Sequence record: NC_041911.1
Direction: 5' to 3' (one strand)
Length of the DNA: 64,000 nucleotides
The notes under the pieces were generated by a model, which was not told the DNA's origin, ran no database searches, and was given only the letters and a program-made list of their open reading frames with translations. This document shows positions 7,865 through 7,972 of the stretch, piece after piece. Position 1 is the first letter of the stretch, and each line of letters starts with the position of its first letter. The position numbers and the translations under genes were made by a program.

Positions 7865-7972
7865 TGATCCCTCGGGTTAGGATTCGAACCTACGACCTGC
7901 GTCTGGTATGGTAGGCCGGCCGCTGAGGACCCGCCTTGGTGACGCCGCTCTGCCGGACTGAGCTACCGAGAG
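7865..7972 (-). tRNA. tRNA-like RNA (class I body) with a 37-nt anticodon loop
   Basis: Acceptor CTCTCGG/CCGAGGG, D arm GCTC/GAGC, T loop TTCGAAT, anticodon stem GCGTC/GACGC enclosing 37 nt; ends A-TCA. Confidence 0.7.

What the first reader, a model, noticed from the sequence alone, without database searches (positions are those of the whole stretch)
7865..7972. tRNA-like RNA with a 37-nt anticodon loop
Acceptor, D and T arms are intact (C1:G72, A73, reminiscent of phage tRNA-Pro bodies). The 5-bp anticodon stem GCGTC/GACGC encloses 37 nt instead of 7, with an internal hairpin (AGGC..GCCT) flanked by ACCA repeats. The T stem has one bulge and the end is TCA. Options: a small intron, a non-decoding tRNA mimic or decoy for anticodon nucleases or elbow-binding proteins, or a decaying pseudogene.
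Basis: partly seen in the sequence, partly recalled or inferred. Interest (0 to 1): 0.75.

Follow-up and report, generated by a model that had tools for sequence, protein, structure and literature searches.

The report
Conserved anticodon-less tRNA mimic in phage
Next to its single ordinary tRNA gene, a giant virus of the plant pathogen Ralstonia carries a tRNA-shaped RNA gene whose anticodon loop is replaced by a 37-base loop with a hairpin; related phages keep the same odd design, so it is probably a working non-decoding RNA rather than junk, but its job is untested.

Summary
The window is Ralstonia jumbo phage RP12. On the minus strand at 7865-7972 lies an unannotated 108-nt tRNA-like gene. 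Its acceptor, D and T arms are intact. A 5-bp anticodon stem encloses 37 nt: ACCA, a 24-nt hairpin, then ACCAUACCA.

Standard finders miss it. It is not a chance fold or a decaying copy. Orthologues occur in phages FLC1-1B and FLC4-3B (flanking proteins about 60% identical) and in four 61-315 kb soil or rhizosphere phage contigs. A more distant copy lies on a fifth contig.

The body is about as conserved as the neighbouring tRNA-Asn. The anticodon stem is paired in all seven sequences, with four pair types at its first pair. The insert is always present although its sequence is replaced.

No U33 or purine-37 is conserved, and acceptor stems are irregular in relatives. That argues against a decoder and against a simple spliced intron.

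The last five loop bases are always N-A-C-N-A, and A73 and G45 are kept. This matches the valine identity set with a free wobble base.

Best reading: a tRNA-Val-derived, non-decoding mimic processed like its neighbours. No RNA data exist, so its function is inferred only.

The parts
7865..7972 (-). tRNA-like gene X, 108 nt, unannotated in the GenBank record
   Evidence: Sequence read and regex parse. My covariance model R1 scores it 111.2 bits. GenBank lists no feature under it.
7966..7972 (-). Acceptor stem, 5' strand CUCUCGG (C1, U4)
   Evidence: Pairs 7/7 with 7869-7875. The acceptor helix shows double-sided changes across relatives.
7947..7963 (-). D arm GCUC-AGUCCGGCA-GAGC
   Evidence: The four D-stem pairs are invariant in all 7 family members. 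G18 and G19 are present.
7941..7945 (-). Anticodon-stem 5' strand GCGUC
   Evidence: Paired in 100% of cells. Three of the 5 pairs have double-sided changes. The first pair is G-C here, A-U in the FLC phages, C-G in the IMG/VR group and U-A in L014.
7937..7940 (-). 5' flank of the loop, ACCA (takes the place of positions 32-33)
   Evidence: Varies among relatives: AUCAUC, AUUACCU, AUCA, ACCC, CAUUUU. No conserved U33.
7913..7936 (-). Inserted hairpin AGGC-G-GGUC / CUCAGC / GGCC-G-GCCU
   Evidence: Fold of the loop. Single copy in the RP12 genome. Relatives carry a hairpin here with a different sequence, with z = -2.3 to -3.9.
7904..7912 (-). 3' flank ACCAUACCA. Its last five bases UACCA occupy positions 34-38 (pseudo-anticodon UAC)
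   Evidence: The last five loop bases are N-A-C-N-A/G in every lineage. The hairpin is followed directly by NCCA in RP12, the FLC phages and the IMG/VR group.
7899..7903 (-). Anticodon-stem 3' strand GACGC
7876..7898 (-). Variable loop AGGUC (G45) and T arm GUAGG-UUCGAAU-CCUA(A)C with one extra A
   Evidence: The T-stem pair 51:63 is A-U or U-A across relatives.
7865..7875 (-). Acceptor 3' strand CCGAGGG, discriminator A73, then UCA where relatives encode CCA
7988..8063 (-). Neighbouring canonical tRNA-Asn(GUU), the only ordinary tRNA of the phage
   Evidence: ARAGORN, Rfam 70.9 bits, and the RP12 paper.

Best explanation
X is a functional, non-decoding tRNA-like RNA that descends from a tRNA-Val-type gene.

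Proposed mechanism (inferred):
- It is transcribed with the phage tRNA cluster and cut out like its neighbours by RNase P and 3' trimming, with CCA repair in RP12.
- Its intact elbow and acceptor arm give it tRNA-like processing and stability.
- A hairpin with CA-rich linkers, inserted 5' of the old anticodon, removes the U-turn, so it cannot read codons.
- It keeps positions 35, 36 and 38, G45 and A73. These are the nucleotides a valyl-tRNA synthetase reads. The likeliest mode of action is therefore binding, and possibly charging, by a tRNA-Val-recognising host factor while staying out of translation. That would make it a mimic or decoy.

Shown here: the anatomy, the conservation, the covariation and the lack of decoder features. 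Inferred: expression, processing and the partner.
For: Conservation:
- Orthologues lie at the same place in the tRNA clusters of FLC4-3B and FLC1-1B. Further copies lie in four IMG/VR jumbo-phage contigs from soil, rhizosphere or plant samples. A more distant copy lies in L014.
- Body identity between RP12 and FLC4-3B is 81-82.5%. tRNA-Asn is 84.4% and the upstream intergenic DNA 55.6%. Flanking proteins are 59-66% identical.

Covariation:
- 91.7% of cells are paired, against 80.9 +/- 2.0 in shuffles and 34-47% when the partners are slid.
- The anticodon stem is 100% paired. Three of its 5 pairs have double-sided changes, and its first pair has four pair types.

Insert and scoring:
- Every clade has an insert hairpin, each with a different sequence.
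- Model R1 scores X copies at 111-133 bits, L014 at 71.9 and ordinary tRNAs at 68 or less.

Not a decoder:
- Position 33 is C, U or A. Position 37 is C or U in three of the four X clades.
- ARAGORN's intron mode calls the orthologues Gly, Met and Val.
- Acceptor stems have tandem mismatches (FLC) or a bulge (IMG/VR group).

Valine-type determinants:
- N-A-C-N-A at loop positions 34-38 with all four wobble bases, A73 and G45 in every X copy, and U4:A69 in RP12.
- These match the published valine identity set (PMC9976931).

Context:
- RP12 has lost or altered the other tRNAs of the cluster yet keeps X.
- X sits between the same U-rich, GUAG-type spacers as the true tRNAs.
Against: - There is no expression, processing or charging data. 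No sequencing run was listed for RP12. The metatranscriptome contigs laid on a relative covered only tRNA-Asn and the start of the neighbouring element.
- The RP12 copy has features that could mean local decay: UCA instead of CCA, an extra base in the T stem, and the weakest hairpin of the core group (z = -1.3).
- Valylation normally needs a regular acceptor helix. The FLC and IMG/VR copies lack one.
- The invariant A-C could serve some other partner, or a decoding role after an unknown kind of splicing.
- Only about four or five independent lineages are known, so counts on single positions are weak statistics.
Confidence: 0.5

Rival explanations
1. X is a tRNA-Val gene interrupted by a small protein-spliced intron at a non-canonical site, just 5' of the anticodon. 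An unknown endonuclease removes the hairpin segment, a phage or host RNA ligase seals the exons, and the product decodes valine codons.
For: - A valine anticodon (NAC) sits at the correct distance from the 3' strand of the stem in every lineage, together with A73.
- An Rnl-type RNA ligase (RP12 ORF209; PF21189 plus PF09414) is conserved at 50-56% identity in all four complete X-carrying relatives.
- RP12 also has RtcB.
- Unexplained introns have been reported in megaphage tRNAs.
- IMG/VR holds many phage tRNAs with inserts of 25-60 nt.
- G002 has no canonical tRNA-Val.
Against: - Joining the first two and last five loop bases gives A-C-U-A-C-C-A in RP12. That means C33 and C37, where elongator tRNAs almost always have U33 and a purine (established knowledge).
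- Position 33 is C, U or A, and position 37 is a pyrimidine in three of the four clades.
- The wobble base is U, C, A or G in different clades. This looks unconstrained rather than tuned.
- Acceptor helices are irregular in relatives.
- There is no bulge-helix-bulge geometry and no EndA-type endonuclease.
- RtcB is missing from FLC4-3B and from three complete IMG/VR genomes.
- The insert is far too short for a group I intron, and Rfam finds no ribozyme.
Confidence: 0.2
2. The RP12 copy is a decaying pseudogene, a dead tRNA that acquired an insertion, even if its relatives are functional.
For: - UCA instead of CCA, an extra base in the T stem, and a hairpin barely better than shuffles.
- RP12 has lost Gln, Asp and a normal Tyr relative to the FLC phages.
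- Standard finders do not call it.
Against: - The RP12 acceptor stem is the most regular of the family, at 7/7 pairs.
- The first pair of the anticodon stem differs from the FLC phages by a compensatory double change (G-C against A-U).
- The body is about as conserved as tRNA-Asn, while the nearby spacer DNA has diverged to about 56%.
- RP31 carries an identical copy.
Confidence: 0.12
3. X has no function in trans. It is a processing signal (tRNA punctuation) or a stabilising cap for the flanking structured RNAs of this non-coding locus.
For: - X is followed in RP12 and the FLC phages by a conserved GC-rich non-coding stretch of about 300 nt with predicted structure.
- The spacer motifs match those between the true tRNAs.
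Against: - A punctuation signal needs only the acceptor and T arms. It would not need a conserved anticodon stem, an always-present insert, or invariant A-C near the stem.
- In the IMG/VR group X is followed by other tRNA-like genes, not by that RNA.
Confidence: 0.1

Closest known systems
Oversized 'pseudo-tRNAs' with enigmatic introns in Lak megaphages (Devoto et al., bioRxiv 10.1101/356790)
   Same: Both are phage tRNA-cluster genes that are too long for bacterial tRNA finders. Both carry conserved short inserts in the anticodon region, with no known bacterial splicing route.
   Different: The Lak cases were read as spliceable tRNAs with defined anticodons (Phe, Gly, Thr, Tyr). X has no U33 or purine-37, and its insert lies 5' of the pseudo-anticodon.
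Valine-accepting tRNA-like structure of turnip yellow mosaic virus (TLS-Val), as reviewed in PMC9976931
   Same: Both are viral, non-decoding tRNA mimics that keep the valine identity nucleotides of the anticodon (A35, C36).
   Different: The TLS is the pseudoknotted 3' end of a plant-virus genome with a normal 7-nt anticodon loop. X is a free-standing gene with a true cloverleaf body and an expanded loop. Charging of X is untested.
Archaeal tRNAs with non-canonical bulge-helix-bulge introns (PMC4090602, abstract listed)
   Same: Both have a short insert in or near the anticodon loop, at a position other than 37/38.
   Different: X has no 3-4-3 bulge-helix-bulge, no EndA in the phage, and a bacterial host.
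Bacterial Y-RNA-like YrlA (Rfam RF02553)
   Same: Both are non-coding RNAs with a tRNA-like module. RP12 also encodes RtcB, which in some bacteria lies in an operon with Ro and YrlA (from my own knowledge).
   Different: The only match is 29.8 bits against a gathering score of 69, and it spans the T arm of tRNA-Asn and the D arm of X. The phage has no Ro/TROVE protein. X is not permuted.
Phage T4 stable RNAs 'species 1 and 2' (rnaC, rnaD) in the T4 tRNA cluster (from memory, not tested)
   Same: Both are small stable RNAs of unknown function, encoded among phage tRNA genes and processed with them.
   Different: No sequence or structure comparison was made. The T4 RNAs are not known to keep a full cloverleaf with an expanded anticodon loop.
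Engineered 'tRNA scaffold' RNAs, in which a structured RNA replaces the anticodon loop to gain processing and stability (from memory)
   Same: The same architecture: an intact acceptor, D and T body with a foreign hairpin carried on the anticodon stem.
   Different: The scaffold is an artificial construct. In X the 3' half of the anticodon loop is retained.

Membership tests
Canonical tRNA (Rfam RF00005 / ARAGORN) | Cloverleaf with D-loop G18 G19 and the T-loop UUCGAAU elbow | tested here: met
   The D stem is invariant and the T stem covaries.
Canonical tRNA (Rfam RF00005 / ARAGORN) | 7-nt anticodon loop with U33 and purine-37, and a score above the family threshold | tested here: not met
   The loop is 37 nt. 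There is no RF00005 match even at E<=10. ARAGORN's default mode is silent. Positions 33 and 37 are not conserved.
tRNA with a bulge-helix-bulge (archaeal/eukaryal type) intron | Two 3-nt bulges separated by a 4-bp helix at the exon-intron borders | tested here: not met
   The internal loop is 4 nt on one side and 9 nt on the other, around a 4+4-bp hairpin.
tRNA with a bulge-helix-bulge (archaeal/eukaryal type) intron | A splicing endonuclease (EndA/Sen) is available | tested here: not met
   PF01974 is absent from RP12 although the control genomes respond. The host genome was not searched.
tRNA with a bulge-helix-bulge (archaeal/eukaryal type) intron | The same anticodon and isotype in orthologues after removing the insert | tested here: inconclusive
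   ARAGORN gives Gly, Met and Val. A manual parse gives NAC (Val) in all, but with a different wobble base in each clade and non-tRNA bases at positions 33 and 37.
tRNA with a group I intron (bacterial type) | A self-splicing intron of roughly 200 nt or more with a P1-P9 core in the anticodon loop | tested here: not met
   The insert is about 30 nt, and there is no Rfam intron or ribozyme match at E<=10.
tmRNA | tRNA-like domain plus a tag reading frame and pseudoknots | tested here: not met
   ARAGORN's tmRNA search found none. The gene is only 108 nt.
YrlA / bacterial Y RNA | A match above the gathering score, and a Ro (TROVE) partner | tested here: not met
   29.8 bits against 69, with the match spanning two genes. 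No TROVE protein is encoded.
Valine-specific tRNA mimic (works like TLS-Val) | A35, C36 and A73 present (G20 and G45 are minor elements) | tested here: met
   A-C at loop positions 35-36, A73 and G45 are present in all X copies. G20 is absent.
Valine-specific tRNA mimic (works like TLS-Val) | Aminoacylation by ValRS | not testable with these tools
   This needs an in vitro valylation assay. RP12 encodes no class Ia synthetase and no Anticodon_1 domain.
Lak-type phage tRNAs with enigmatic introns | An oversize phage tRNA gene with a conserved insert and a definable anticodon | tested here: inconclusive
   The oversize gene and the conserved presence of an insert are met. A definable decoder anticodon loop is not. 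No Lak sequences were compared.

The most novel reading that the evidence does not exclude
X is a valine-identity tRNA mimic of a bacteriophage. Host ValRS would recognise, and perhaps charge, an RNA that can never decode. This would be a phage counterpart of the plant-virus TLS-Val. It could be used to tie up or redirect ValRS or EF-Tu, or to bait a tRNA-Val-directed host nuclease. In this reading the inserted hairpin followed by NCCA is a second, internal copy of an acceptor end.
Probability: 0.2. Interest if true: 0.8.

Novelty: new variant of a known kind. Interest (0 to 1): 0.58.

Why it matters
Phage tRNA genes are usually explained by codon supply, or more recently by escape from tRNA-cutting defences. 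Here one phage lineage keeps only one or two real tRNAs, yet it maintains a set of tRNA-shaped RNAs that cannot decode.

In X the constraint pattern is: free wobble base, fixed A35 and C36, A73, no U33. That pattern looks like selection for recognition by a synthetase-like reader rather than by the ribosome. If that holds, it would be the first phage analogue of the aminoacylatable tRNA-like structures of plant viruses. It would also give a concrete handle on the 'enigmatic' inserts reported in megaphage tRNAs.

The gene is unannotated in RP12, RP31, FLC1-1B and FLC4-3B, and it is small enough to test directly by northern blot, tRNA sequencing, a charging assay and a deletion.

Tried and rejected
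1. Repeat or mobile element. The hairpin occurs once in the 280-kb genome at up to 3 mismatches. Rejected.
2. Dependence on phage RtcB. RtcB is in RP12 but absent from FLC4-3B and three complete X-carrying genomes. Rejected as a required partner.
3. Y-RNA/Ro system. No TROVE protein, and the YrlA match is only an artefact across two genes.
4. Phage-encoded CCA-adding enzyme, EndA, class Ia synthetase or Anticodon_1 domain. None found.
5. Pairing of the ACCA motifs with the gene's own D loop. The D loop changes (UUGGU, CCGGU, CCGGC) without matching change in the flank. Rejected.
6. Expression evidence. No run was listed for RP12. RNA contigs laid on the L022 cluster covered only tRNA-Asn and the first bases of the next element. 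Uninformative.
7. Metagenome scan with the stem pattern. It gave 74 hits, of which only L253 is tRNA-like and the rest are GC-rich coding DNA.
8. Genome scan. Hits were mostly archaeal intron-bearing tRNAs, with a few bacterial oddities (L333, L378) unrelated to X.
9. Conserved protein neighbour. ORF132 occurs only in RP12, RP31 and the FLC phages. tblastx found no protein shared between window 1-20000 and the IMG/VR flanks. The flanking ORFs have no Pfam match.
10. Fast evolution of X between FLC1-1B and FLC4-3B. The whole tRNA cluster is mosaic, with Asn and Gln differing more than X, so this is not specific to X.
11. A ValRS-X complex prediction was not run. A shuffled-RNA control cannot test isotype specificity.

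Full report
IDENTITY OF THE WINDOW. The window is bases 124001-188000 of Ralstonia phage RP12, a 279,845-bp phiKZ-related jumbo phage. The genes around the finding run on the minus strand, and the finding must be read on that strand.

THE OBSERVATION. On the minus strand, 7972 to 7865 reads as a cloverleaf.
- The acceptor CUCUCGG pairs with CCGAGGG, 7 of 7 with one G-U. This gives C1:G72.
- The D arm is GCUC-AGUCCGGCA-GAGC.
- The 5-bp anticodon stem is GCGUC/GACGC.
- The variable loop is AGGUC.
- The T arm is GUAGG-UUCGAAU-CCUA(A)C, with one extra A.
- The discriminator is A73, followed by UCA.
- The stem encloses 37 nt: ACCA, a 24-nt hairpin (AGGC-G-GGUC, loop CUCAGC, GGCC-G-GCCU), then ACCAUACCA.

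Free folding recovers the acceptor, D and anticodon stems and the inner hairpin.

The gene is invisible to routine tools. ARAGORN finds only tRNA-Asn at 7988-8063. Rfam finds tRNA-Asn and a second odd element at 8080-8187, but not X, even at E<=10. The published annotation lists one tRNA. Folding energy alone is not distinctive: z = -0.34 for the gene and z = -1.3 for the loop. The case rests on comparison with other phages.

RELATIVES. In FLC4-3B and FLC1-1B the cluster reads Gln-Asp-Asn-Tyr. These are a different genus, and their flanking proteins are 59-66% identical to RP12's. The cluster is followed by an unannotated orthologue of X, 112 nt long, at the same place relative to a conserved downstream region.

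A pattern scan of IMG/VR found four more copies of 126 nt on contigs of 61-315 kb. The sequencing runs that hold this DNA are soil, rhizosphere and plant metagenomes. These copies again lie in a Tyr-Asn cluster. The phages are related to RP12: an RNA ligase of RP12 is 54-56% identical in them.

A covariance model built from the six sequences scores the X copies at 111-133 bits. A further copy on contig L014 scores 71.9, and no ordinary tRNA among about 100 loci scores above 68. In the whole RP12 genome only X and tRNA-Asn match. One metagenome scan added a single doubtful relative, L253.

SELECTION. Between RP12 and FLC4-3B the two body halves of X are 81% and 82.5% identical. tRNA-Asn is 84.4%, the insert 64%, and the intergenic DNA upstream of the cluster 55.6%.

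On the seven-sequence alignment:
- 91.7% of pair cells are standard pairs, against 80.9 +/- 2.0 in column shuffles (0 of 500 reach the observed value) and 34-47% when the partners are slid.
- The anticodon stem is paired in every sequence. Three of its five pairs show double-sided changes.
- Its first pair is G-C in RP12, A-U in the FLC phages, C-G in the IMG/VR group and U-A in L014.
- T-stem and acceptor pairs also covary.

The alignment was fitted to the model, which favours the structure somewhat. The compensatory changes are also visible by eye in the raw sequences.

Every clade has a hairpin in the loop, but its sequence is replaced. The FLC phages carry a 6+5-bp stem capped by a GNRA tetraloop (z = -2.9 and -3.9). 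The IMG/VR group carries a 7+9-bp two-part stem (z = -2.3).

The RP12 hairpin is unique in its genome, so it is not a dispersed repeat. A decaying pseudogene would not keep all this at a divergence where spacer DNA no longer aligns. RP12 has lost or altered the Gln, Asp and Tyr genes of its relatives yet keeps X.

IS IT A DECODER WITH AN INTRON? ARAGORN in intron mode gives these calls:
- The FLC4-3B copy is called Met(CAU).
- The FLC1-1B copy is called Val(UAC).
- The RP12 copy is called Gly(ACC), and only at a lowered threshold.
- The IMG/VR copy is called Val(AAC).

Two phages that are 99% identical overall therefore get different isotypes.

Anchoring on the stem gives a clearer picture. 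The 5' end of the loop is ACCA, AUCAUC, AUUACCU, AUCA, ACCC or CAUUUU, so there is no conserved U33. The 3' end is UACCA, CACUA, AACCA or GACAA. Positions 35 and 36 are always A-C and position 38 is always A. The wobble position takes all four bases. Position 37 is C or U in three of the four clades.

Near-universal U33 and purine-37 are established features of elongator tRNAs, and their absence argues against decoding.

The acceptor helices of the relatives are also irregular. The FLC phages have tandem G4.A69 and C5.A68 mismatches, and the IMG/VR group has a bulged A.

There is no bulge-helix-bulge and no EndA. The insert is an order of magnitude too short for a group I intron, and Rfam reports no ribozyme.

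RP12 encodes RtcB, but FLC4-3B and three complete IMG/VR genomes do not. An Rnl-type ligase (PF21189 plus PF09414) is shared by all. Such ligases are common in jumbo phages, so this is weak evidence. Splicing is therefore not excluded, but it would have to be of an unknown kind and would yield an abnormal loop.

WHAT THE CONSTRAINT PATTERN SUGGESTS. The pattern is a free position 34, fixed A35 and C36, A73 and G45, and in RP12 also U4:A69. This is the experimentally defined valine identity set. Its minor element G20 is missing (PMC9976931). The same pseudo-anticodon, CAC followed by A-G, sits at the 3' end of the 62-nt loop of a second element. I call that element X2. It lies directly upstream of X in the IMG/VR group.

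I therefore read X as a derivative of a tRNA-Val-type gene. In it, a hairpin with CA-rich linkers was inserted 5' of the anticodon, and selection since then has preserved what a synthetase-like reader sees, not what the ribosome needs. This is inference. The regular acceptor helix that ValRS prefers is present in RP12 but not in the relatives. The A-C could serve another partner. RP12 encodes no class Ia synthetase or Anticodon_1 domain, so any such partner would be a host protein.

A second shared detail is that the hairpin is followed directly by NCCA in RP12, the FLC phages and the IMG/VR group. This resembles an internal acceptor end. With only two or three independent lineages it is no more than suggestive.

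PROCESSING CONTEXT. X is flanked by the same kind of spacer as the real tRNAs of these clusters: CCA, then a U-rich run, then GUAG-like bases. Relatives encode CCA, whereas RP12 has UCA. No sigma-70-like promoter lies within the locus, as expected for a phage with its own polymerases. Co-transcription and processing by RNase P and exonucleases are inferred, not shown.

EXPRESSION. None could be shown. No run was listed for RP12. For the L022 relative, two RNA libraries held contigs covering tRNA-Asn and up to about 25 nt of the next element, and nothing over X. DNA relatives varied only at the fourth base of the 5' flank and in the apical loop.

COMPARISON WITH KNOWN THINGS.
- The nearest described phenomenon is the set of oversize pseudo-tRNAs with 'enigmatic introns' in Lak megaphages. 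X differs in lacking a decoder loop.
- Functionally the nearest analogue would be the valylatable TLS of tymoviruses. X is a free-standing cloverleaf gene of a phage.
- X is not a tmRNA.
- X is not a YrlA-type Y RNA. The YrlA match is sub-threshold and spans two genes, and there is no Ro protein.

VERDICT. It is a real, conserved, unannotated tRNA-like gene, most likely a non-decoding mimic (0.5). A novel kind of spliced tRNA-Val (0.2), a locally decaying copy (0.12) and a pure processing signal (0.1) are the rivals. I class it as a new variant of a known kind (phage tRNA-like or interrupted tRNA genes). It is of moderate to good interest because the constraint pattern yields a sharp, cheap experimental test.

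Noticed in passing
window 8077-8187 (-): A second tRNA-like gene, which I call Y. It has a class II body, an encoded CCA, a long variable arm and no anticodon loop. Rfam's tRNA model gives 35.8 bits with a 25-nt 'loop'. It sits where the IMG/VR relatives have tRNA-Tyr. A homologue with the identical D arm but a longer insert lies on L014 at about 9945-10105 (-).
   Followed up: partly
window 7556-7860 (-): A GC-rich non-coding stretch of about 300 nt directly 3' of X. It is conserved in the FLC phages with indels that are not multiples of three. RNAalifold predicts 93 pairs, 6 of them with double-sided changes, and Rfam has no match. It is a candidate structured RNA.
   Followed up: partly
L014:9761-9838 (-), L024:2457-2534 (-), L431:1704-1781 (-): A 78-nt tRNA-like family, which I call Z. 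It has the same acceptor as the FLC copy of X (CCCGCGG/CCAAGGG). The tandem G4.A69 / C5.A68 mismatch is conserved across phages. It has a 6-bp anticodon stem, a T-loop-like 6-nt loop UCGAAU, G73 and a covarying T stem. The mismatched acceptor therefore looks like a maintained feature, not decay.
   Followed up: partly
L022:8818-8950 (+) and homologues in L021, L024, L025: Element X2: a tRNA-like gene with a 62-nt anticodon loop. The loop contains a T-arm-like hairpin (CCCGG-UUCGAAU-CCGGG) and a second hairpin, and ends in CACAG. The acceptor stem has a bulged U.
   Followed up: partly
IMG/VR loci L026-L235 (for example L027, L029, L044): IMG/VR holds many phage tRNA genes with anticodon-loop inserts of 25-60 nt. 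At least 54 are tRNA-Ile(UAU)-like genes with an insert at the canonical 37/38 place. Thirteen are Tyr(GUA) genes. Another group of inserts shares the motif ACAGCAA.
   Followed up: no
L003 vs L004, locus positions 1997-2258: FLC4-3B and FLC1-1B are 99% identical overall. Their tRNA-Asn genes nevertheless differ at 22 sites and tRNA-Gln at about 20, while Tyr and Asp are identical. This suggests allele replacement within the tRNA cluster.
   Followed up: no
RP12 genome 196759-203231 (outside the window): RP12 encodes both an Rnl-type RNA ligase (ORF209) and RtcB (ORF213) a few genes apart. The ligase is conserved in all X-carrying relatives, and RtcB in none of those searched. The genome search first look missed PF09414 in RP12, although hmmscan finds it.
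   Followed up: partly
L022:9118-9287 (+); L014:10100-10400 (-): Further non-canonical tRNA-like genes lie in the relatives' clusters. ARAGORN calls them 'His(atg)' and 'Phe(aaa)'. One has a 6-bp stem with a 5-nt loop. The complete 315-kb phage G002 has only Tyr and Asn as normal tRNAs.
   Followed up: no
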